Of a DNA stretch of 64,000 nucleotides, positions 1 to 13,309 are shown piece after piece. The notes under the pieces were generated by a model, which saw only the letters and a program-made list of their open reading frames with translations, was not told where the DNA came from and ran no database searches. Source of the DNA: Saccostrea cucullata (lineage: Eukaryota); the NCBI RefSeq assembly GCF_032062105.1, contig NW_026939778.1, positions 682,001-746,000 on the forward strand, given 5' to 3'. Position numbers and translations under genes: made by a program. Each line of letters starts with the position of its first letter. The first letter of the stretch is position 1.

Positions 1-150
1 AAATGAAAAATTACTTTTGACTTGACAGTAGATTAATATATGTATTTATTTTGTTAATTCTGAAATAAATAAAGAAAATGCATGCTGCAACTAGCAGCTC
101 ATCATGCTCATTGTAAGATATTTTTTAAACCATGGTATTCCATCTTCCAG

Positions 151-877
151 GTAACTCATTTGGCCGGTGCCCTAAGGAAGCATGGGGTAGAGAAAGGGGA
201 CAGGGTACTGATTTACATGCCCATGATCCCCCAGGCTATCATTGCTATGATGGCCACGGCCAGGTTAGGGGCAATACATTCTCTTGTTTTTGGAGGCTTT
301 GCTTCAAAGGAACTGGCTGTCAGAATAGATCACGCAGAGGTAAGAAAAATAATTAAACAGAAAAGTATGAATCGTTCATTTACAATGCAGGAGAATTCCC
401 AGATTAAATTTGGCAGAGGTCATATGTGTTGCATCATTGATTTCCACTCAGTAATTGTCTCATGCATGTATAAATTAGCAAGACCTCTTGGAATAAGGAC
501 AACAATTCATTGAGAATTTTAAAGTGCTACCGTAAATCTGGAAATTTTTACTGTAGATAAATTTTTAGCAAATTTGCGAGTGCAATGCATTCGCAAAAAT
601 ATTTTTCTTAAAATTAAATCATGTAAAGAAATTTTTTTCTGAAAGTTGTTGTCTATTTTTAACTCAGTGAATAGGCGTCGGTAAGCACTGTTTATTTTTA
701 AAAAGAAACCTGTTTATACTACTGTAACTACAAGCTAATTATCCGTGCTTGTAAATTGCCCTCATTATACGCAATATCGTCCGATGGTTTGACAAGCACT
801 GAGATGGTGTGTCCCTTTTTTAGCTCTACTGGTCAGAGACCAGAAGAGCTTATGCGATAGTAATGCGTCCGTCGTCC

Positions 878-911
<34 letters not shown>

Positions 912-3900
912 AAACAATTTTTCAAAATGCTACTCCTCCTACAGTTTTGGTCCGATTTCAATATAACTTGGCACACAAGTAGACTACACTAAGATACATA
1001 ATTCTGTGCATCGGTTTTTGATTTTGATGAACGGTGTTGCCATGGTTACTAAAAATAGAAATTTCTGTGAAATTCTTTCAAAATGCTACTCCTCCTACAG
1101 TTTTAGTCTGATTTCAATATAACTTGGCACACAAGTAGACTACACTAAGATACATAATTCTGTGCATCGGTTTTGAATTTCGATGAACGGTGTTGCCATG
1201 GTTACCAAAAATAGAAATTTCTGTGAAATTCTTTCAAAATGCTACTCCTCCTACAGTTTTGGTCCAATTTCAATATAACTTGGCACAAAAGTAGACTACA
1301 CTAAGATACATGATTCTGTGCATTGGTTTTTGATTTCGATAAACGGTGTTGCCATGGTTACTAAAAATAGAAATTTCTGTGAAATTCTTTCAAAATGCTA
1401 CTCCTGCTACAGTTTTGGTTTGATTTCAATATAACTAGGCACACAAGTAGACTACACTAAGATACATAGTTCTGTGCATTGGTTTTTGATTTCGATGAAT
1501 GGTGTTGCCATGGATACCAAAAATAGAAATTTCTGTGAAAGACTTTTAAAATATGCTACTCCTCCTACAGTTTTGGTCTGATTTCATTATAACTTGGCAC
1601 ACGAGTAGACTACACTAAGATACATAAAGATGTGCATCGGTTGTTTGATTTCGATGAAAGGTGTTGCCATGGTTACTAAAAATAGAAATTTCTGTGAAAT
1701 TCTTTCAAAATGCTACTTCTCCTACAGTTTTGGTCTGATTTCAATATAACTTGGCACACAAGCAGACTATACTAAGATACATAATTCTGTGCATTGGTTT
1801 TTATTTTGATAAGTGGACCATTTTCTATTAATTGCTGTTTTAAAGTTTCAAGTGGCTACTGCTACTTTTCTCTTCCTTTGTTTTAAGTATAAACCAGTAG
1901 AGCTACAGTCTCGATAGAGACTTCTGGTTTTGTCACATAGGTTGGGAGATTGCACAAACTGAAATGGAATTTAAAATGTATGTACAGGCTGCCTAAAATC
2001 AGGGCTCCCACTGGACCGAAAATATTTTTCGCCACTTTTCGCGACAAAAGGAAAGGCATATTTACATCTGATTTTTCGAAATTGCAATGCACTTTATGTT
2101 AGTCCTTTTTTTAGCTCTACTGGTCAGAGACCAGAAGAGCTTATGCGATAGTAATGCGTCCGTCGTCCGTCCGTCTGTCTGTCTGTCTGTCCGTCTGTCT
2201 GTAAACAATTTTTCAAAATGCTACTCCTCCTACAGTTTTGGTCGGATTTCAATATAACTTGGCACATAAGTAGACTACACTAAGATACATAATTCTGTAT
2301 ATCGGTTTTTGATTTCGATGAACGGTGTTGCCGTGGTTACTAAAAATAGAAATTTCTGTGAAATTCTTTCAAAATGCTACTCCTCCTACAGTTTTAGTCT
2401 GATTTCAATATACCTTGGCACACAAGTAGACTACACTAAGATACATAATTCTGTGTATCGGTTTTTGATTTCGATGAACGGTGTTGCCGTGGTTACTAAA
2501 AATAGAAATTTCTGTGAAATTCTTTCAAAATGCTACCCCTACTACAGTTTTGGTCGGATTTCAATATAACTTGGCACACAAGTAGACTACACTAAGATAC
2601 ACAATTCTGTTTATCGGTTTTTGATTTCGATGAACGGTGTTCCGTGGTTACTAAAAATAGAAATTTCTGTGAAATTCTTTCAAAATGCTACTCCTTCAAC
2701 AGTTTTAGTCTGATTTCAATATAATTTGGCACACAAGTAGACTTCACTAAGATACATAATTCTATATATTGGTTTTTGATTTCGATGAACGGTGTTGCCG
2801 TGGTTACTAAAAATAGAAATTTCTGTGAAATTCTTTCAAAATGCTACTCCTCCTACACTTTTAGTCTGATTTCAAAATAACTTGGCACACAAGTAGACTA
2901 CACTAAGATACACAATTATGTTTATCAGTTTTTGATTTCGATGAACGGTGTTGCCGTGGTTACTAAAAATAGAAATTTCTGTGAAATTCTTTCAAAATGC
3001 TACTCCAAATACAATTTTAGTCTAATTATAATATAAATGTGGCATGCAAGTGGACTGCACTAAGAACAAAAGAGACTTAATCAAGGATCATTATTCTATT
3101 TATTGCTGTTGAAAAGTTTCAATTTCCAACTGCTTAAGTACTTTTCTCTTCCTTTGCTATAAGTACAAACCAGTAGAGCTTCAGTCTCGACAGAGACTTC
3201 TGGTAATTATTTTGCCAAGAAAGAGAGACCAGTTATTTAATCCAAGCATGTATCAACACGGGTGATAACTCGAGTTCAGTGCTTTTACTAGAGAGTTCCA
3301 AATGTAAACACGGCGTGTAAATTTTAGGTGAGAAAAAAACCAAACGTTGAGAAAATTAGTTATGTATATTTTTGTCTTTATTTGGATTATATTTTAGGTT
3401 AAAAGGCATACACAACCTCTAATTAATTTAGAAGTTATTTTCAGTGCAAATCCTTTTGTATTTTTATCTTCAAAATTGTTTCGGAGCGATTCTGCAATTT
3501 CTTGCCACGTTGCAAGTATATTGGTGGTATTCTAACTGTGCATACTAAATTGAAACATAAACTGATATGAAAATCTTAAGGGATTTTTAGGTCACCTGAG
3601 TAAACTCAGGTGACCTATTGCTATCTGTTTTTGTCCGTCGTCGTCCGTCGTGCGTCGTGTGTTAACATTTGAACATTTTCAGCTTCTTCTCTGAAACCAC
3701 TGAACCAATTTTAACCATATTTGGCACAAAGCAGGTATGGGTGAAGGGGAACAAAAATTGTGAATTTCATGATCCCTGCCCCCCTGGGGCCTGAGGGGTG
3801 GGGCCAAAACCACTGAAATTAATGCAATCTTTAAAAATCTTCTTCTTTACTCCTGGACATCAAGCAGTCAAACTGTTTGCATGATTGTAATCAGCAATGA

Positions 3901-6900
3901 GTCCTCTACCAAAATTGTGAATTTTATGGCCCTGGGGTCAGGGGTTCTGGTGTTAGGGCGGGGCTCTATTGATTATATAGTGAAAATACAGGAATTCTTT
4001 GAAAATCTTCTTCTCTGCTCCTGGGTATTAAATAAACTAACTAAGTACATAGTTATGATGAGCAAGAGTGCCTCTACCAAAATTGTGAATTTTATGGCCC
4101 CAGGGTCAGGGGTTCTTGTTTTAGGGTGGGGCTCTAATGATTATATAGTGAAATGCATGAATTCTTTGAACATCTTATCCTTTGCTTCTGGTTAATATGC
4201 TTATGATTTAATTACATATTTAAGGCCAGTATTTTTTTTATTTTCAGTTTTACAAACCCTCCGCTCAAGGTTTTGAATTTTCAGAAAAAAATAAAACAAT
4301 TTTTTCTTTCCGATGTCAAAATTGAGTCGGGATCGAGATTTCAAATTTACGAACTCGCACTTCCAGTTTTAAGATGAAACGGCGGGTAATGCTAGATCTA
4401 TCTGAGAAGATAGGTTAGTTTAGTGTAAAATTCATCGATTCGAGTGCCATTCAAAACGTTTCACCCGTTCAAAGGACAAATAAAATGCTGACGAATTTGT
4501 TGCACAATGACATGCTGGTGAGATAATTATGTATTAGTTTCAAAAGTGTCTGTCTGTAAATTATTTTCCTCCCCCAGGTTTTAAACTGCCCGTGGTAGCT
4601 ATTGCATATTGTCAGCGACATTGTTTAGGTCTCTGTTATAGCTTACAGTCTAAGCATCATTCTTCAGAAAAGGGTTGCTTATGCATCAGATGTAATGAAT
4701 AAAACTATGGGAGAAGTTAAGTCTATTTGAGGAAGAAATAAACAATAACCTGAAGAAATAAAAAAAATTTCAACTATTAAAAGGCAAGAATATACAAATA
4801 TATACAGGCATGTAGTATCATTTGTATCAGCCAGAAAAATTATTTTACACTTAATTGAAAAAATGTTCACCCTACTCTCCAATACTCCCTGTCTGTTTTA
4901 TGATAGGAATTATATAATTTTAGGCATCAAGTAAATTTTAGAACAATGCCTACACATTCACCTATCACATATTAAAAAAATGAAGATATATTGAAAGACA
5001 TTTAAAGAATTGATTTTTTAAAATACATTTTGACCAATATCACAAAATTTATATAACTGGCCCAAACTGGCAGATGATGAAATAAGCAATGTTCTACTTT
5101 CCTGTTTGTAAGCATTATGTGTCCAGTGGTAAGGAGCCTATTAGAATGGCATAAAAAAGAATGTACAAATGTTAATAATTGATTTATCCAAAAAAAAAAA
5201 TTTAATTATTTCCTTCTCATTCGGGACATTTTTATTCTCATGTTCATAACTAAACCTAAACATAAAAAAAATGCTGGACTTGTAATGAAGAAAGGGGCCT
5301 CTTTCAAAATAGATAATGTCAGGGCCGCTTGGTCAGGGGTACCAGGGGGGTACTTTGACTAAAAATAAATTAATGCATTGAAATCTGCCCTTTGATAAGC
5401 AATGGGGCCTCTTTCAAAATTTGTGAATTTCATGGCTTTTGGATTAAAACACGAACCAAATACAATCGCTGGAAAGTTGTTGCATGATACTCAGGTGACC
5501 TATAAGGCCCGTGGGCCTCTTGTTAATTTTAGCTCCAGTGACAATTCGCAAAATTTTGAAGCGTAAAAATTAATCAATAGCTTTTTGACCCAAATTCGCA
5601 AAAATAAATCGACGTAAGAATTTCCAGATTTACGGTATCACTATGTAGGAAGTGCTCCCACAATTTTCTTTCTTTTTTTTCAGCATTTGTATTAAATTTT
5701 TTTCTTGCACTTTTCAGCCAAAGGTTGTCATCAGTGCTAACTGTGGAGTAGAGCCAAACAGAAATGTCCTGTACAAGCCCATGCTGGATGCTGCTTTAGA
5801 AATGGCCACCCATAAACCAAAGAACTGCATCATTTACAACAGACCAATGGTAGGAAATCTGGAGTCTCATAGGACATAACTCATGGAATCAAATGATGAT
5901 CACAAAAAATTGGCATTTGATGATATAATTTTTAATTATCCACTGGGAAATACATGTACATTGTATTCTAAACTTTTTCATTTTAGTTTCCATTCTGCAC
6001 ATTTATCAAAGGCCGAGATTTAGATTGGGAGATAGAGGTTGGGATGTCTAAACCAGTAGACTGCGTGCCTGTGGATTCTATGGACCCGGCATATATCCTC
6101 TACACATCGGGGACAACAGGGCTTCCTAAGGTCTCCATTTACTGCAAAACAGCTATTTCTCATGTACTCTGTACAATTGAACACAGAAGCCTATAGTACT
6201 AATGATTATTGTTTCTTCTCCCTCAACAAATTTGGAATCACCTTGTCCATTTTCTAATAAGATTTTTTGTAATGAAGAAACATTTGAAGCTTATTCATTG
6301 ATTTCCATCACCTGATGGTGTGTCATGATAATGAATCAATGCCATTTGGGCAAATGATTGTAAAGTGAGGGTGTAGAATGATCTTGAACCAAGATCATTC
6401 ATGCAAGTTCAGGGTAACTTTAAGTTGACTGACGTGTACATGTATAATTATTTCCTGGCCATATATTGTAATGAAAAAAAACTTAGCATAAATATTGTCT
6501 ATGATCTGAGTGTGTTTCATGACCTTGACCCTTCACATTCAAGTCATATTATATGGCAAGGTAAATTTCGGAATTTTTTACCATTTTTAATCTAGTAGCA
6601 TTATATTTTTAGGCAGTGGTCCGGCCAAGCGGGGGTCATGCCGTGGTCTTGAAGTGGTCAATGTGGAATATCTATGGTCTCAAGCCAAAGGAGGTCAGTT
6701 CATAAACTTGATTAAGCAGTAAAGATATTGCTGATAATAAGTAACAGAAAATGCAACTGAAATGGTAGAGTGATTTTTTGGACTTTGATTTTCTTAGGTA
6801 TGGTGGTCAGCTTCGGATCTGGGCTGGGTTGTGGGACACTCCTATATTTGTTACGCCCCTTTACTCAATGGAAACACTACAATTGTGTATGAGGTAAGGT

Positions 6901-9900
6901 AACAGATCAGATGTTGAACTTTTTTGCTGAGATATTTTAAATCTTTTAATTTAATGTAAATCTATAAAATACTGCACAATATGTAATTGGTAAATTTAGT
7001 TTAAATCATTTATCAGAACTTGTCAATGTATAAAAAAAAAAGAAATTTTAAAAAAAGGGGACATGAAAAATAAAGATTTAAAACTTTTCTTATGTGTGTA
7101 TCAAATGTTAGGGAAGTATTTGAAGTATTTATAGGTTGATAATGTTGATACTAGAAGAAGAACTTGGAATAATACTGTTATAAAAGTTTCATAACCAATC
7201 TTGACTATGCTTTTATAGGGTAAACCTGTGGGTACCCCTGACCCTGGGGTTTACTTCCGGATTCTGAAGGAACATGATGTAGCAGGGATGTTTGTAGCCC
7301 CCACTGCAATCCGAGCCATTAGGAGAGAGGTGAATTGATAAATCCCATAGTATATTCATAGTAACTGTACTAACTGATTTATATAACTGTTGTCTAATAA
7401 GGGAGTGAAATCTTTGCTTTACCAATAAACCGTTTGTTGATCTTAATTTTTTAGGACCCAGATGCCTCTTTTGCTCAGAAGTACCTTCCACTGCCAAAGT
7501 AAGTAAAATAAAAATGAATTGTACTGGTAAAATTTTATACAGGGGCCATATCTTATGATTAACCAGTCTCTGTATTTTGACCTGTATTTTGACCTCTGTA
7601 GATTTTGAATTGTGTCACATTTACAAGTATCTGTGCATCTTTCTGTATTTTGACACATGTAGGGTTTGAGTATAGAAAGATTTACTTGACTGTATCCGTC
7701 TGTGTTTTGATCTTTGTAGGTTTTGAGTATTGTCAGATTTTTTTTTTTTATCTCTTCCTTATTTTTATCTCAGTCAGTAGATTTGAGATAAAGGTGTATC
7801 TAGTTTTTTTTTTCTCTGAAGATTAAGATAAAGGTGTATCTATTTCTAATCTCTGTAGGTTTGAGATTTAAATGTATCTATTTTTCATCCCTGCAGGTTT
7901 GAGATTTAAGTGTATATATTTTTCATCTCTGTAGATTTGAGATATCTATTTTTGATCTCTGTAGGTTTGAGATATCTATTTTTGATCTCTGTAGATTTGA
8001 GATATCTATTTTTGATCTCTTTAGATTTGAGATACTAGTATCTATTTTTTGACATCTGTAGATTTGAGATATCTGTTTTTGATCTCTGTAGATTTGAGAT
8101 ATCTATTTTTGATCTCTGTAGATTTGAGATATCTATATTTTGATCTCTGTAGATTTGAGATATCTATTTTTTGACATCTCTAGATTTGAAATATCAATTT
8201 TTGATCTCTGTAGATTTGAGATATCTATTTTTGATCTCTGTAGATTTGAGATATCTATTTTTGATCTCTGTAGATTTGAGATATCTATTTTTGATCTCTG
8301 TAGATTTGAGATATCTATATTTTGATCTCTGTAGATTTGAGATATCTATTTTTTGACATCTCTAGATTTGAAATATCAATTTTTGATGTCTGTAGATTTG
8401 AGATATCTATTTTTGATCTCTGTAGATTTGAGATATCTATTTTTGATCTCTGTAGGTTTCGAGGTTTGTTTGTGGCAGGAGAACACTGTGACAAGGAGAC
8501 TCTGGAGTTTGCTCACTCTGTACTGCAGGCTCCTATACTGGACAACTGGTGGCAAACAGGTCAGTATTAAAAATGATACATGTCTATACATGAATACTAA
8601 ATATTTCTACAAGTTTATAAAATCATTATGAATTAGACAAATATCACAGTAATAGATAAATTTGATAATTCCATGTAATTGAGCATTTTGTAACCAAATA
8701 CATGTACATACACCTGTACTGATGTGAATGAGTTGTGGGTGTGTGATACCTTTATTTATTTACAGAGACGGGGTGGGCCATCAGTGCGACATGTGCAGGG
8801 TTAAATATGTCCTTGTCCCCACCCTCAGGGGCTGCTGGGAAATCGGTACCGGGCTGGAATGGTAAAAAATTAATATACATAGGACAAATTAATAGTTTTA
8901 ATGAGCATTTAATGAGTCATTGTTTACTGAAAAACTAAGTTTTTGTTTGTTTGTTTTTTTTTAATTGCTTACAATCCAGTTTCTTTATAGTTCAGGTTTT
9001 AAGGAAGGATTTCTCACAGGCTTCCACTGGTGAGCTGGGAGACATTGTTGTCAAGTAGGTCTTGTGTAGATACAGTCAATTATACATACAATCTAATGTA
9101 ATATGTACCATGTATAAATATTTAAGATGTAAATAGACTTATTTTATTTGAAGAAAGAGTGAACATAGAGGTATGGACATGGTGATAGTATTGTTGAGTG
9201 AAATGTCAAATTTTCTTTCCTTAGGTTGCCTTTACCACCTGGAGCATTTAGTACCCTGTGGAAAAATGAGGAGCGATTCAAAAAGACTTACTTTGAAAGC
9301 AAACCAGTATGTTTTCCATTTTCTGTTTATCCAGTTGATTTGTAAATCAGATTGTAGATTGTGTATGCAGAAATTACATAAAAATAAAGTATCTTAGTTT
9401 TAAGAGAAAAATAAGATCAAGATTTTCAACATTATAAGTACATGTATTACAGATATCAGGTTTATTTTTAATAAATTGTAAGTGAAATTTTGCTTATGGA
9501 ATAGATCACAACAAGTTAGGTACTCACTGAGTATGTTTTTTCATCATTTTTGTTCTATACGACTAGTTTATAATCATTACAAGTTGGGTACTCATTGAAC
9601 AAGTTTTATCATGATTTTTATTCTACAGTTGTCTTCTGCCATTACAGGGTTACTATGACACCATGGATGCAGGCTACAAGGATGGAGAGGGCTATGTTTA
9701 TGTCATGGCCAGAAGTGATGATGTCATCAACGTGGCGGGCCACAGACTCTCGACGGGTGCAATAGAAGAGGTAGCCACTTTTATACTGGAAATAATGTCC
9801 ATTTGAATAAAGAGAAGAATGGCTGCCAAAAGAATTTTTTAGGCTGAAAAAAGTCAAGATGCACATTTTTATAAATGTTCGATTTTTGTACATGTACTAG

Positions 9901-11332
9901 AAGTGTAAAATGTTGTCATAGAGCATTGAAAGCGCACACTCTATTTAGTTTAGCCTGATCAATTAATGCATATTAAATGTCAAGGTACTACTGTTCCTTA
10001 ATAATGAAAGCAATACAATTTTTTTTTTCTATATCTACATGTATTTGTAGGCAATCATGACGAGTGAGGATATAGCTGAGGTGGCAGTGGTGGGAATACC
10101 TGACACACTCAAAGGTCAAATACCGCTGGGACTGTGTGTACTAAAACATGGTAAGTATACACAGTACTAAAACATGGTAAGTACACAATGACTAATATAC
10201 ACTCAAAGGACAGGTACCACTAGGACTGTACATACTAAAATGTGGTAAGTATACTAAATACCTAAACATGTAAGTACAAAGTACTAAAACATGATAAGTA
10301 CTTAGTGACCAAAATACAGGTACCAATGGGACTTTGTACTAAAACATGATAAGTATACAGTGACTTAAAGACATCCTCAAAAGACAGGTAATATGGTTCA
10401 TACACAGTGTTCTGAACATCAAAGCTTATTTAGAAATAGTAACGAATTGGTGAAGAAATATTCTGATCTTTATTTTTGAATAATTGGAAATTCTGATAGA
10501 AATATTTTTATTTTACAATTTTCCTTGATTTAAACAGGAGTGCAGAAGTCAGCAGATGAAGTTATAGATCATGTCCGAGATGTAGTGAGAAGCAGCATAG
10601 GACCAGTGGCCGCCTTCAAACTCGCGGTTATTGTCCCAAAGCTACCAAAGACTCGAGCTGGGAAGATAGCTCGTAGCACCATAGCTCTCATGGCAGCTGG
10701 TCAGCCATTCAAAGTAAGCAACTAATATGTGGTATTTGAATAAATACCTTTTATCCTTATTTTGATACAACTGATGATACTCAAGTGACCATCAAGGCCC
10801 ATGGACTTTGTTTCTTTTATATGTTGTGCATGCAGTTATGATAGATAAACTCTTTAAAAAATTGATTACTGTAGATCACTAAATTTTCACGACACCTTAT
10901 TTTCGCGAGATAGTCATTGACTCTTAATTAGCGAGACAAAATTTTCACGAATTGTGGTTCTTGCTCTTTATAATCTTAAGAAATGCTATTATACACGAGA
11001 ATTAAATTTTCTCGAGCACACTGTCACGCATAATTATGCAAAAATAAAGTTCTCGCGAATAAAAAGTGATTTACAGTACCTACTTGTAGTACAAGGTTGG
11101 GTAGGTATTTAACAAGTGGTGAGCTAATAAAATCTAAGAAGCCAAAATCTAGGAAAGCTATTTATGAAAAGTGTTTCTAAGTTTGACTGCTACATTATTT
11201 TATAAAAAGAAATCTCAGGTTTGATGAGATATGTTTTTGCACCCTTTGTAGATTCCAGTGACTATTGAGGATGCCTCTGTGTATCCGTACATCCGGGACG
11301 CTCTACAACAGATTGGCTATGCCAAAGAGTAA
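151..11332 (+). CDS. ACSS3: Acyl-CoA synthetase short-chain family member 3 (propionyl/acetyl-CoA synthetase), 5'-partial, with proximal last exon
   Basis: Phase-consistent GT-AG exons 151-339, 5718-5849, 5987-6130, 6613-6693, 6798-6893, 7219-7329, 7455-7498, 8456-8559, 8766-8861, 8991-9054, 9225-9306, 9648-9770, 10051-10150, 10538-10713, 11252-11332 (TAA). Encodes the AMP-binding motif YILYTSGTTGLPK plus SDLGWVVGHSYICY, YEGKPVGTPD, DNWWQTETG, RSDDVINVAGHRLS and PKTRAGKI, typical of ACSS3/PrpE. N-terminal exons lie upstream of the window. Confidence 0.95.
816..1931 (+). mobile_element. Helentron/HINE (DINE-1/CvA-like) non-autonomous element with 156-bp internal tandem array
   Basis: T-run insertion site, subterminal IR agctctactgg/ccagtagagct, 5' hairpin, (GTCY)n microsatellite at about 867-910, about 5.6 copies of a 156-bp unit from 921, 3' stem-loop agtctcgatagagact. 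Confidence 0.85.
2106..3204 (+). mobile_element. Second copy of the same HINE family with 156-bp array
   Basis: Same termini, microsatellite and 3' stem-loop as 816-1931; units start at about 2212, 2368, 2524, 2679, 2835 and 2991. Confidence 0.85.
3584..5524 (+). mobile_element. HINE-like element of a different family, interrupted at about 4220-5270
   Basis: 5' tttttaggtcacctgag..ctcaggtgaccta hairpin, gtcc/gtcg microsatellite, degenerate internal repeats, 3' ctcaggtgaccta plus aggcccgtgggcct stem-loop. Confidence 0.75.
7565..8455 (+). repeat. 30-bp minisatellite (ttttgatctctgtagatttgagatatctat) whose last unit is the ACSS3 acceptor
   Basis: 18 regular units with AG ends from 7934 to 8455, degenerate copies back to about 7565, and a 182-bp higher-order repeat (8140 vs 8322). 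Confidence 0.92.
10104..10392 (+). repeat. Degenerate tandem copies of an ACSS3 exon 3' end and donor (gtactaaaacatg/gtaagta)
   Basis: The motif recurs near 10138, 10164, 10233, 10261, 10281 and 10337; 10199-10250 copies the last ~46 nt of the exon plus donor. Confidence 0.8.
10869..11076. mobile_element. TA-flanked MITE
   Basis: TIR ctgtagatcact / agtgatttacag with TA on both sides. Confidence 0.75.
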
Positions 11333-12239
11333 TAAAGCAGCATTATATTAACACTGCCTTTTTGTAGCATTAACTTGATCTGTGTGTTATTGAAAAAAAT
11401 TAACTGACTTTGTGAATGGTTTAACATTTTTCTAAAATATTCGGCAAAAAAAGATCATGATAAATTTTGTTTGGTTTTAAATGAATACCATTCAACAGAG
11501 TACATGTATGTATATTTTGTGGGTTGCTTGCAGTGTACTGATTTTATTTATTATTCTTTTCAGATTAAAACAATAATTTTTCATTCCATATTATTTTCCT
11601 CACTAACACTCGCATGCTTATACATTGCATGAGTGAATATATTGATATATTTTTACTTAATATCATTCTTTGTGACAGCTTTGCATGTTTAATTATCTTT
11701 GAGTACATGTATAACATGACTGAATGGAAAATAAATTTTTAGAGAAAAGAAAAACTTTTTTATGACCTTGAAATGCATAAAGGAATGCAGTCATTACATG
11801 TTTTAAAAAAATTTTAAATTGTATAAATAATTTTTCTCGGTTAAATCAGGGACCTGTGTACTAAATACATGTATATAGGTCCCAGGATGTATGTATGTGT
11901 GGTTAAGTAGTATCTTCATTACGTACTGTATTTTGTTTGGTTTTTAATTTGTTTTTGCACTTTTACTCAGGCTATCCTATTTTGCTTACTTCATGTACAG
12001 TAACTGTTTATTATAAATGTACCAGTAGCTAATTTTTTTCTGATGAGTTGCAGGGGAGAAAATAAACAACTAAATTCTCTAAAAGCATTAATACCAAAAC
12101 TTATATCCTATATATCATTATAAGTTGATCTATATGATATATTTAAAAAAAACTACACTTTTAAAGTAATACTTCCTTATATTTTTTGTCAGTTTAAAAG
12201 ATTTACAAAATACATTATATAAATAGACAATAAACAAGA

Positions 12240-12393
12240 CAGTAAAACAGCCTTTTCAGCCAAGTGGCAGGGAAATGCAATTTCAATTCATTATAAGTGT
12301 AATTCATAATATTGTAGCACGAGCAATAGGATTAAAATCATAATTTAAGTGTGAATTCATTATAAGGGTGTTCACTATAACCATGTTTTACTG
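12240..12393. mobile_element. Degenerate MITE (cagtaaaaca family)
   Basis: TIR cagtaaaaca / tgttttactg. Confidence 0.55.
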
Positions 12394-12437
12394 TATTACA
12401 TACTGGTCAGGAGCTATATTTTGTGTATCTGTTGTAG

Positions 12438-12530
12438 GTACCAGCCACTCTAGAAGATCCAGAAGTCTATTCCAAACTGAAGGTGTCTTTTGAAGAAGCA
12501 GGGTTTACTGTTGGAGAACCACAATATTAA
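12438..12530 (+). CDS. ACSS3: Alternative (duplicated) terminal coding exon of ACSS3: VPATLEDPEVYSKLKVSFEEAGFTVGEPQY*
   Basis: Acceptor tgtgtatctgttgtag ends at 12437; phase 0 matches the donor at 10713; 30 open codons; P-x-T-[IL]-E-D-x-x-V-Y shared with exon 11252-11332. Confidence 0.8.
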   Translation, partial: VPATLEDPEVYSKLKVSFEEAGFTVGEPQY

Positions 12531-12710
12531 AAACATGCACTGAACCATATGTGTGCCTATAAGTGTGAACATACAACATTAGAGCACTGAGGAAAATGCA
12601 GCATTGGAGAATGTCCATGACAAAACAAAAAGTTATACCTCTCTTATGCCTAGAATTGGTTTGGGTAAAGTAGGCTAGCTACAGGTGTGCTAGGGCAACA
12701 CATGTTATTA

Positions 12711-12897
12711 CAGTAAAACATGCTTATAAAAGAGTGCCAGAGATGGATGATTTTGTTTTGCTATAAGCATACTAGTAATTAATCATTTCCACTAGTTTAC
12801 AAAACTAGTATATTGTAAAGTTGTATGAGGAATGAAAATCAGTTTGCTGTGAGAGACAATGCAATAGAAGTGTGTTTGCTATAAGCTTGTTTTACTG
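12711..12897. mobile_element. TA-flanked MITE (cagtaaaaca family)
   Basis: TIR cagtaaaacatgcttata / tataagcttgtttttactg with TA flanks. Confidence 0.7.
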
Positions 12898-13309
12898 TAA
12901 TTGTATAATTTTAGCAGTAGTTGTGATATATTTTGGTATATTTGTGTATGCTGTTATAGTCAGTTTTTATACATGCTTGTGTATATATGTGTCATACACT
13001 TTGTCTGATTTATCTAGTCTTCCAGAAATAAAACATTACTTTTCTTCAGATCACATATTTTATCTCCCACCCAATCTTTCACTCCCTTCCATTTTTTTTC
13101 CTTTACCCCTCCCCAATATTGATTTGAAATGTGCAAAAGTATTTAAAGATTTCTATTGCATATGTGGTTTTGCTTTGGGATAAAAATGTTATGCTAATTT
13201 GTTAGAAAATATTTTTTCAGCTGCTACTTTTATGTGATGTGTTATATTAATTAAGGAACTTGTGTAATGTCTTAACGTGTGATATGACTTCTATACTTTC
13301 TCAGACATA

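What the first reader, a model, noticed from the sequence alone, without database searches (positions are those of the whole stretch)
11252..12530. ACSS3 has two homologous, mutually exclusive last exons
Seen: exon A (IPVTIEDASVYPYIRDALQQIGYAKE*) and exon B (VPATLEDPEVYSKLKVSFEEAGFTVGEPQY*) both have good phase-0 acceptors, intact frames and the P-x-T-x-E-D-x-x-V motif of the acyl-CoA synthetase C-terminus, yet are highly diverged in DNA. An AATAAA overlaps exon A's stop (11331-11336). Inference: an old exon duplication kept by selection, swapping the C-terminal helix and 3'UTR through alternative splicing and polyadenylation. I do not recall this arrangement for vertebrate ACSS3.
Basis: partly seen in the sequence, partly recalled or inferred. 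Interest (0 to 1): 0.75.

Follow-up and report, generated by a model that had tools for sequence, protein, structure and literature searches.

The report
Oyster ACSS3: two swappable C-terminal exons
An oyster propionyl-CoA synthetase gene carries two old, related copies of its last coding exon, so it can probably make two enzymes that differ only in the final helix; public annotation of other molluscs already shows both forms.

Summary
Exon A (from 11252) and exon B (12438-12530) both follow the penultimate ACSS3 exon (ends 10713), with AG acceptors in phase 0. They are homologous at 7 of 24 residues.

RefSeq already lists both C-termini as isoforms X1/X2 in Ostrea, Magallana, Mytilus, Mya and two sea snails. 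The window's exon B groups with the B exons of three other oysters.

The layout is probably not two separate last exons with their own poly(A) sites. Oyster A-type proteins end ...IGYAKE plus YQPL/YQPQ. In the window, YQPL-stop is exon B read one base out of frame. Exon A is therefore most likely a 77-nt cassette exon with donor GA|GTAATA at 11329, spliced to exon B's acceptor.
- Included: the frame shifts and stops after four codons.
- Skipped: exon B supplies the alternative helix.

KRAS exons 4A/4B are the nearest named case of alternatively used homologous last exons.

No RNA run was listed for this species, so use of either form here is inferred from orthologues. This is a new member of a known kind, of modest interest.

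The parts
142..10152 (+). Upstream ACSS3-like coding exons inside the window. Approximate tblastn match ranges: 142-354, 5715-5849, 6005-6139, 6613-6696, 6774-6893, 7204-7329, 7455-7499, 8421-8558, 8753-9178 (split), 9217-9306, 9645-9770, 10051-10152. The gene starts upstream of the window.
   Evidence: tblastn of Saccostrea cucullata ACSS3-like P0297 against the window gave exon matches mostly at 90-100% identity. NCBIfam's best family is propionate--CoA ligase for 3 of the 4 window exons tested.
10538..10713 (+). Penultimate coding exon. It carries the A10 motif LPKTRAGKIAR and ends with the donor AAA|GTAAGC.
   Evidence: It is single-copy in the assembly, with only a 45%-identical distant paralogue elsewhere.
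11252..11328 (+). Exon A, a 77-nt probable cassette exon encoding IPVTIEDASVYPYIRDALQQIGYAK plus GA of the split codon. This is the canonical ACSS3 C-terminal strand and helix.
   Evidence: Over 25 columns it is identical to S. cucullata P0297, and it closely resembles the single C-terminus of other phyla. Its length is not a multiple of 3.
11329..11336 (+). Proposed donor GTAATAAA of exon A. If the intron is not removed, these same bases hold an in-frame TAA (11330-11332) and AATAAA (11331-11336).
   Evidence: Sequence. Use as a donor is inferred from the orthologue tail EYQPL.
11329..12437 (+). Intron between exon A and exon B (1109 nt).
   Evidence: Inferred from the donor and the acceptor ...tctgttgtag.
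12438..12530 (+). Exon B coding part in frame 0: VPATLEDPEVYSKLKVSFEEAGFTVGEPQY, stop TAA at 12528-12530. It is read this way when exon A is skipped.
   Evidence: tblastn of the Ostrea and Magallana B-type isoforms matched it at 55-57% identity. It sits in the oyster B clade, 95/98.
12438..12453 (+). The same exon read after exon A. G completes GAG (E), then TAC CAG CCA CTC TAG gives YQPL and a stop.
   Evidence: The result is identical to the last residues (EYQPL) of S. cucullata P0297.
12531..13032 (+). Putative shared 3'UTR. The next AATAAA after the stop is at 13027-13032; an ATTAAA overlaps the stop at 12526.
   Evidence: Hexamer positions. Their use is an inference with no RNA evidence.

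Best explanation
The gene is the oyster orthologue of ACSS3, a mitochondrial propionate/short-chain acyl-CoA synthetase. Its last coding exon was duplicated in tandem long ago.

The upstream copy, A (11252-11328, 77 nt), is the canonical version and behaves as a cassette exon. It has a weak donor, GA|GTAATA, and is spliced to the acceptor of the downstream copy, B (12438). B is the shared terminal exon.

- Exon A included: because 77 is not a multiple of 3, exon B is read one base out of frame and stops after YQPL. The protein ends ...IGYAKEYQPL.
- Exon A skipped: the penultimate exon joins exon B in frame. The protein ends VPATLEDPEVYSKLKVSFEEAGFTVGEPQY.

Either way only one version of the final short strand and 11-residue helix of the small C-terminal domain is made. 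That domain also carries the catalytic A10 lysine. Both stops lie in the last exon, so neither form should trigger nonsense-mediated decay.

Shown here: the sequence anatomy, the homology, the single-copy status, and both protein forms in related species.

Inferred: that this species makes both forms, that A-inclusion is the major form, and that the swap alters enzyme behaviour.
For: Anatomy and frames.

Homology of A and B.

Single locus in the assembly.

Both forms in orthologues:
- Ostrea edulis X1 (A + YLPQ) and X2 (B)
- Magallana gigas X1 (A + YQPQ) and X2 (B)
- XP_052706718 X2 (B)
- Crassostrea virginica X1 (B)
- Three Mytilus RefSeq sets plus two M. coruscus models from another annotation (A and B-like)
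- Mya arenaria X2 (A) and X1 (B)

Splicing of A to B:
- The S. cucullata protein P0297 matches the window's exons at about 90-100% and ends EYQPL. In the window, YQPL* sits at 12439-12453.
- The A-tail can be coded by a shifted frame of the B start in 7 of 7 oyster and Mytilus pairs: +1 in oysters, +2 in Mytilus.
- All 20 of the 20 listed Logan-derived members of the two oyster clusters are the spliced A + tail form. Several stand on contigs of about 3.5-3.9 kb, far shorter than the gene, so they are transcript-like.

Retention of B:
- The four oyster B exons form a starred clade, 95/98.
- All four B peptides, the three from proteins and the window's intact ORF, share ...AGFTVG.P, which lies well beyond the part needed for the YQPL tail.

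Fold: AlphaFold2 models of the M. gigas B and A isoforms both place a helix at 659-669, with block pLDDT of 89 and 90.

Gene identity. The nearest solved structure, 5gxd, aligns across the exon junction.
Against: - There are no RNA data for this species. The look-up of sequencing runs listed no run, so read laying could not be used. No junction, poly(A) site or isoform ratio has been seen.
- No transcript-derived B-type protein was seen. B forms came only from annotation pipelines. Hidden members of the 90% clusters could not all be read: 40 of 50 were read and 15 listed for one cluster.
- S. cucullata, the nearest named species, has only the A form annotated.
- B evolves much faster than A among oysters: 13/24 against 22-24/24 identities to the window.
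- The donor GTAATA is weak, and it overlaps an in-frame TAA and an AATAAA. Termination inside a non-spliced exon A is therefore possible.
- The frame test has low specificity: 2 of 5 cross-species controls were also compatible.
Confidence: 0.72

Rival explanations
1. One reading: A and B are two true alternative terminal exons. Transcripts that use A stop at TAA 11330-11332 and are cleaved after AATAAA 11331-11336. Transcripts that use B skip A.
For: An in-frame TAA and an AATAAA lie directly after ...AKE. The donor at 11329 is weak: GTAATA, with no G at +5. For Mya, Babylonia and Littorina, the A-type protein end cannot be coded by a shifted frame of B (0 of 3 pairs), so A may carry its own stop in those lineages.
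Against: All listed oyster A-type proteins have the 4-residue tail that only an A-to-B splice can give. This includes the 20 listed Logan-derived members and P0297 of the nearest species. The window keeps both the GT and an intact YQPL* frame. AATAAA or ATTAAA occurs about once per 290 nt in this AT-rich stretch, 13 times in 3.8 kb, so one next to the stop is weak evidence.
Confidence: 0.12
2. Exon B is only the constitutive terminal exon, supplying the YQPL tail and the 3'UTR. Its long frame-0 reading is a decaying relic of the duplication that annotation pipelines turn into a spurious isoform.
For: Every transcript-derived oyster protein listed is A-type, 20 of 20. S. cucullata has no B isoform annotated. 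B is about 55% identical among oysters against about 92% for A. From base composition alone I estimate that a stop-free run of 30 codons has roughly a 10% chance in DNA of about 33% GC; this figure was not simulated.
Against: The frame is open and aligns without gaps in four oyster genera. The motif ...AGFTVG.P is conserved at its far end, and a related ...AGFTTGKPE is found in Mya. The window's B joins the oyster B clade at 95/98. The hydrophobic positions of the helix are kept, and the AF2 model of the B isoform predicts the helix with block pLDDT 89. An independent, non-RefSeq annotation of Mytilus coruscus also gives both ends.
Confidence: 0.1
3. Exon B belongs to another gene or to a tandem paralogue.
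For: None was found.
Against: The penultimate exon, A and B are each found once in the 1.17-Gb assembly. Only 1109 nt separate A from B. B has a phase-0 acceptor that matches the penultimate donor.
Confidence: 0.01

Closest known systems
RefSeq isoforms X1/X2 of 'acyl-CoA synthetase short-chain family member 3, mitochondrial(-like)' in Ostrea edulis (XP_048730308/309), Magallana gigas (XP_065940867/868), Mytilus spp. and Mya arenaria (XP_052800400/401)
   Same: It is the same gene with the same two C-terminal peptide types. In oysters the A form has the same 4-residue tail. The window's A and B are orthologous to them.
   Different: Those are automatic annotations with no stated interpretation. 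I found no paper that describes the pair as duplicated homologous exons or notes the two-frame use of the last exon. The species of the window has no such annotation among the proteins seen.
KRAS exons 4A/4B, and alternatively spliced tandemly duplicated exons in general
   Same: Two homologous exons at the 3' end of a gene give alternative C-termini. The source is passages of PMC9882654 read, which call this a frequent outcome for tandemly duplicated exons. From recall: in KRAS the upstream exon 4A is optional, and exon 4B is present in both mRNAs.
   Different: Here exclusivity comes from a frameshift: a 77-nt exon moves the stop to four codons inside exon B, rather than a stop inside the upstream exon. 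The KRAS detail is recalled, not taken from a call. The protein is a mitochondrial enzyme, not a membrane-targeted GTPase, and the swapped part is a structural helix, not a lipidation signal.
Bacterial propionate--CoA ligase PrpE / acetyl-CoA synthetase family (nearest solved chain 5gxd_A)
   Same: The enzyme fold and motifs match. An A-type spliced fragment (P0161) aligns with 5gxd residues 560-622 across the junction, covering ...PKTRSGKI... and then PATIDDPAIL. P0297 matches the PrpE profiles end to end.
   Different: Bacterial genes have one C-terminus and no introns. P0297 scores 669 bits, below the curated equivalog cut-off of 955.

Membership tests
ACSS3 / propionate--CoA ligase (AMP-forming acyl-CoA synthetase) | Domain set: ACAS_N, AMP-binding and AMP-binding_C | tested here: met
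   Precomputed Pfam PF16177, PF00501 and PF13193 were found on the orthologues, including the oyster clusters. Fragments of the same penultimate exon carry PF13193. The window's exons match P0297 at about 90-100%.
ACSS3 / propionate--CoA ligase (AMP-forming acyl-CoA synthetase) | A10 motif with the catalytic lysine (PKTRxGK) | tested here: met
   LPKTRAGKIAR is present in the penultimate exon. The name of the motif is recalled.
ACSS3 / propionate--CoA ligase (AMP-forming acyl-CoA synthetase) | Best family match is propionate rather than acetate ligase, above the curated cut-off | tested here: inconclusive
   Propionate--CoA ligase is the best family for P0297 (669 bits against a cut-off of 955) and for 3 of 4 window exons. 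The penultimate exon scores higher for acetate--CoA ligase, 34.6 against 24.3 bits. Single exons cannot reach whole-protein cut-offs.
Alternatively spliced homologous (tandemly duplicated) exons | Two neighbouring exons are homologous, with the same acceptor phase | tested here: met
   (E 3e-6, ungapped).
Alternatively spliced homologous (tandemly duplicated) exons | Both versions are conserved across species | tested here: met
   A is nearly invariant. B is found in four oyster genera, with B-like ends in Mytilus, Mya, Babylonia and Littorina. A single origin of all B exons is neither shown nor rejected (p-AU 0.227).
Alternatively spliced homologous (tandemly duplicated) exons | Transcripts carry one or the other version in this organism | not testable with these tools
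   No RNA run was listed. The only evidence is orthologue proteins.
   Oyster A-type proteins end in a tail encoded by exon B's +1 frame. A GT donor is present at 11329. This rests on sequence and orthologues, not on RNA of this species.

The most novel reading that the evidence does not exclude
The A/B exon pair may be a single duplication older than the split of bivalves and gastropods, and perhaps shared with nemerteans (Tubulanus X1/X2 also differ only in this peptide). On this reading it has been kept for some half a billion years because the two terminal helices give the mitochondrial propionyl-CoA synthetase different regulation or partners next to the catalytic A10 lysine. Oysters and mussels would enforce the either-or choice by reading one terminal exon in two frames.
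Probability: 0.25. Interest if true: 0.5.

Novelty: new member of a known kind. Interest (0 to 1): 0.3.

Why it matters
The case is a clean, conserved example of proteome diversification by tandem exon duplication in a core metabolic enzyme, in a phylum where splicing is little studied. One small twist stands out: a 77-nt cassette exon makes the shared last exon dual-coding, so the two homologous helices can never occur together, and neither form should trigger nonsense-mediated decay.

For annotation, exon A should not be called a terminal exon, and the short YQPL tail is real coding sequence.

For biology, the question is what a swapped last helix does to an acyl-CoA synthetase whose C-terminal domain must rotate during catalysis. 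That can be tested with recombinant isoforms. It is not a surprise to specialists, and the isoforms are already in RefSeq for related species.

Tried and rejected
- RNA evidence. The look-up of sequencing runs on 9600-13000 listed no run, so read laying had nothing to lay and was not called.
I therefore could not check the donor, the TAA/AATAAA or dN/dS in other oysters, nor whether exon A has its own stop in Mya and the gastropods.
- Short-fragment search with the penultimate exon. Of 13 hits, 11 read through into the intron, 1 diverges early, 1 is a spliced A-type, and none is B-type.
- Representative search. It gave 646 hits at E<=0.001 and listed 150. I fetched 34 of these. Most are exon fragments running into the intron, and none is B-type.
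- Search with the Ostrea B-type C-terminus. Of 78 hits, only the query itself is B-type. The 90% clustering hides isoforms inside clusters, so I used the listing of cluster members instead.
- PDB searches with the A and B peptides alone. Nothing meaningful was found, because the peptides are too short.
- Peroxisomal or other C-terminal sorting signal as the point of the swap. None of the A or B ends looks like a PTS1 tripeptide. The consensus is recalled and this was judged by eye. Rejected.
- Tandem paralogue. Rejected.
- Tree of the 25-residue peptides. It is too short to date the duplication. Only the oyster B clade is well supported, and B_Littorina with x1_Tubulanus is flagged as a long-branch join.
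- Bacterial promoter/terminator scan. It is irrelevant to a eukaryotic gene and was ignored.
- Supplementary files of papers were not consulted. Of the papers, I read only passages of PMC9882654. All others were seen as search listings only.
Full report
**What is in the sequence**

The window carries most of an ACSS3-like gene on the + strand.
- The penultimate coding exon (10538-10713) encodes ...GPVAAFKLAVIVPKLPKTRAGKIARSTIALMAAGQPFK and ends at the donor AAA|gtaagc.
- After an AG acceptor, 11252-11332 reads IPVTIEDASVYPYIRDALQQIGYAKE-stop.
- After another AG acceptor, 12438-12530 reads VPATLEDPEVYSKLKVSFEEAGFTVGEPQY-stop.
- Both acceptors are in phase 0, and AATAAA lies at 11331-11336.
- The two peptides align without gaps at 7/24 identities and 15/24 positives, E 3e-6 for the pair. 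The DNA is only weakly alike.

**Gene identity and copy number**

NCBIfam's best family is propionate--CoA ligase for 3 of the 4 window exons tested, and for the orthologue P0297 end to end (669 bits, below the bacterial equivalog cut-off of 955). The penultimate exon alone scores slightly better for acetate--CoA ligase.

tblastn of Saccostrea cucullata 'ACSS3, mitochondrial-like' (P0297) against the window matches the exons mostly at 90-100%. The window therefore comes from an oyster close to that species.

In the 1.17-Gb assembly the penultimate exon, exon A and exon B each occur once. The only other hit to the penultimate exon is a 45%-identical paralogue on another contig. A tandem paralogue is excluded.

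**Which copy is canonical**

Proteins from other phyla end like exon A, with the pattern IPVTIEDxxVYPxIKxALQxIGYAK. These include a tardigrade, a brachiopod, an annelid and a hemichordate; bacteria are similar. This comes (34 of the 150 listed representatives fetched). Exon A is the conserved original. Exon B is the diverged copy.

**Both forms exist in relatives**

A full-length search returned many molluscan ACSS3 entries labelled isoform X1 or X2. Because isoforms fall into one 90% cluster, I listed the cluster members.

| Species | A-type end | B-type end |
|---|---|---|
| Ostrea edulis | X1 ...IGYAREYLPQ | X2 IPSSIEDADVYLQLRVAFEDAGFTVGAPE |
| Magallana gigas | X1 ...IGYAKEYQPQ | X2 IPASIEDAEVYPQLEEVLKEAGFTVGKPV (same in XP_052706718) |
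| Crassostrea virginica | not listed | X1 ...AGFTVGKPTYT |
| Mytilus (three RefSeq sets, two M. coruscus models from another pipeline) | ...IGYPKNSPIN | IPPSIEDPTVFSAIQTALKGIGLIKNTD... |
| Mya arenaria | X2 | X1 ...AGFTTGKPEIVPTD |
| Babylonia, Littorina (gastropods) | present | a B-like end |

- A second look-up added the nemertean Tubulanus, whose X1 and X2 also differ only in this peptide.
- Haliotis, Patella, Biomphalaria, Physella, Lingula and Capitella show only one type.
- The Ostrea and Magallana B tails hit the window's exon B at E 1.5e-6 and 6.6e-5.
- In a 25-column tree the four oyster B exons, the window's included, form a starred clade (95/98). One clade of all B exons is not rejected (p-AU 0.227) but is not shown either.

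Every listed oyster A-type protein has four more residues after ...AK/R-E/Q: YQPL, YQPQ, YLPQ or YRPQ. In the window, exon A's frame stops right after E.

The missing YQPL-stop is found at 12439-12453, which is exon B read one base out of frame. I first saw this by accident and then confirmed it. For this reading, exon A must end at 11328 (...GCC AAA GA), where the next bases are GTAATA. The G at 12438 then completes GAG.

Exon A is therefore a 77-nt internal exon with its own donor, spliced to the same acceptor that the skipping form uses.
- Included: the frame shifts and ends after four codons.
- Skipped: exon B is read in frame.

A back-translation test supports this. A shifted frame of the B start can encode the A tail in 7 of 7 oyster and Mytilus pairs, +1 in oysters and +2 in Mytilus. 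This implies exon A lengths of 2 and 1 modulo 3 respectively. It works in 0 of 5 tests for Mya, Babylonia, Littorina and Tubulanus (Tubulanus tried in both directions). Two of 5 cross-species controls were also compatible, so the test alone is weak.

The spliced A + tail form is also the only one among the 20 listed Logan-derived members of the two oyster clusters. Several of these stand on contigs of about 3.5-3.9 kb, which is transcript-like.

**What the swap changes**

- An A-type spliced fragment aligns with the solved PrpE-like chain 5gxd across the junction, up to its last residues.
- AlphaFold2 models of the M. gigas B (P0282) and A (P0284) isoforms have mean pLDDT of 83.3 and 83.5.
- Both models place a bridge residue near 654 and a helix at 659-669. 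The pLDDT for block 661-670 is 89 in B and 90 in A.
- The hydrophobic positions I1, I/L5, V10, Y11, I/L14, L/F18 and G22-Y/F23 are kept in both copies, while the exposed positions differ.
- The swap therefore replaces the surface of the last helix of the C-terminal domain. That helix lies just after the A10 lysine motif, and B adds a short tail, TVGEPQY.
- What this does to catalysis or regulation is unknown. I saw no sorting signal in any of the ends.

**Limits**

- No RNA run was listed for this DNA.
- Use of the GT at 11329, skipping of exon A, and any use of the AATAAA at 11331 in this species are inferences from orthologue proteins.
- No transcript-derived B-type protein was seen. B forms come from annotation pipelines, which in my recollection create extra isoforms only with transcript support.
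- S. cucullata has only the A form annotated.
- B evolves faster than A: 13/24 against 22-24/24 identities to the window among oysters.

**Comparison with what is known, and novelty**

The kind is well known: tandemly duplicated homologous exons used alternatively. KRAS 4A/4B is a case at the 3' end of a gene (passages of PMC9882654).

The two protein forms are already in RefSeq for related molluscs. I found no paper on them:
- 'ACSS3' with 'alternative last exon' gave 0 papers.
- 'ACSS3' with 'alternative splicing' and 'mollus' gave 0 papers.
- 'ACSS3' with 'oyster' gave 4 papers, which look unrelated by title and abstract start.

Two points may be new descriptively: the homology of the two exons, and the two-frame use of the shared last exon. 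The pair may also be very old.

**Verdict**

The feature is real and conserved. It is a new member of a known kind, with an interest score of 0.3.

Noticed in passing
window 12354-12398, 12706-12728, 12858-12901: A short repeat (...TATAAGCxTGTTTTACTGTAAT...) occurs three times around exon B. One copy lies 40-60 nt upstream of exon B's acceptor. The other two form an inverted pair, 95% complementary and 151 nt apart, in the putative 3'UTR, which looks like a MITE. The intronic copy is 91% complementary to the first 3'UTR copy, so the pre-mRNA could pair across exon B.
   Followed up: no
window 7565-8559: A minisatellite of ORF-like repeats (DLRYLFLISV... units) runs up to the acceptor of the ACSS3 exon matched at 8421-8558. 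It was already noted in earlier finding s1-732158.
   Followed up: no
proteins P0285, P0287 (Crassostrea/Magallana gigas models): Two further annotated C-terminal variants break off inside exon A after IPVTI...IPVTILCDRFQ and ...IPVTINYML. This suggests an additional internal donor or older mis-models in that species.
   Followed up: no
proteins P0249 / P0411 (Tubulanus polymorphus X2 / X1): A nemertean ACSS3 also has two annotated isoforms that differ only in the last-exon peptide. This is either a shared ancient duplication or an independent one.
   Followed up: partly
window 765-2570: Repeated ORF fragments (for example ...NGVAMVTKNRNFCEILSKCYSSYSFSLISI and TDRQTDRQTD runs) lie in the large intron after the first exon of the window. 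They look like copies of a dispersed repeat.
   Followed up: no
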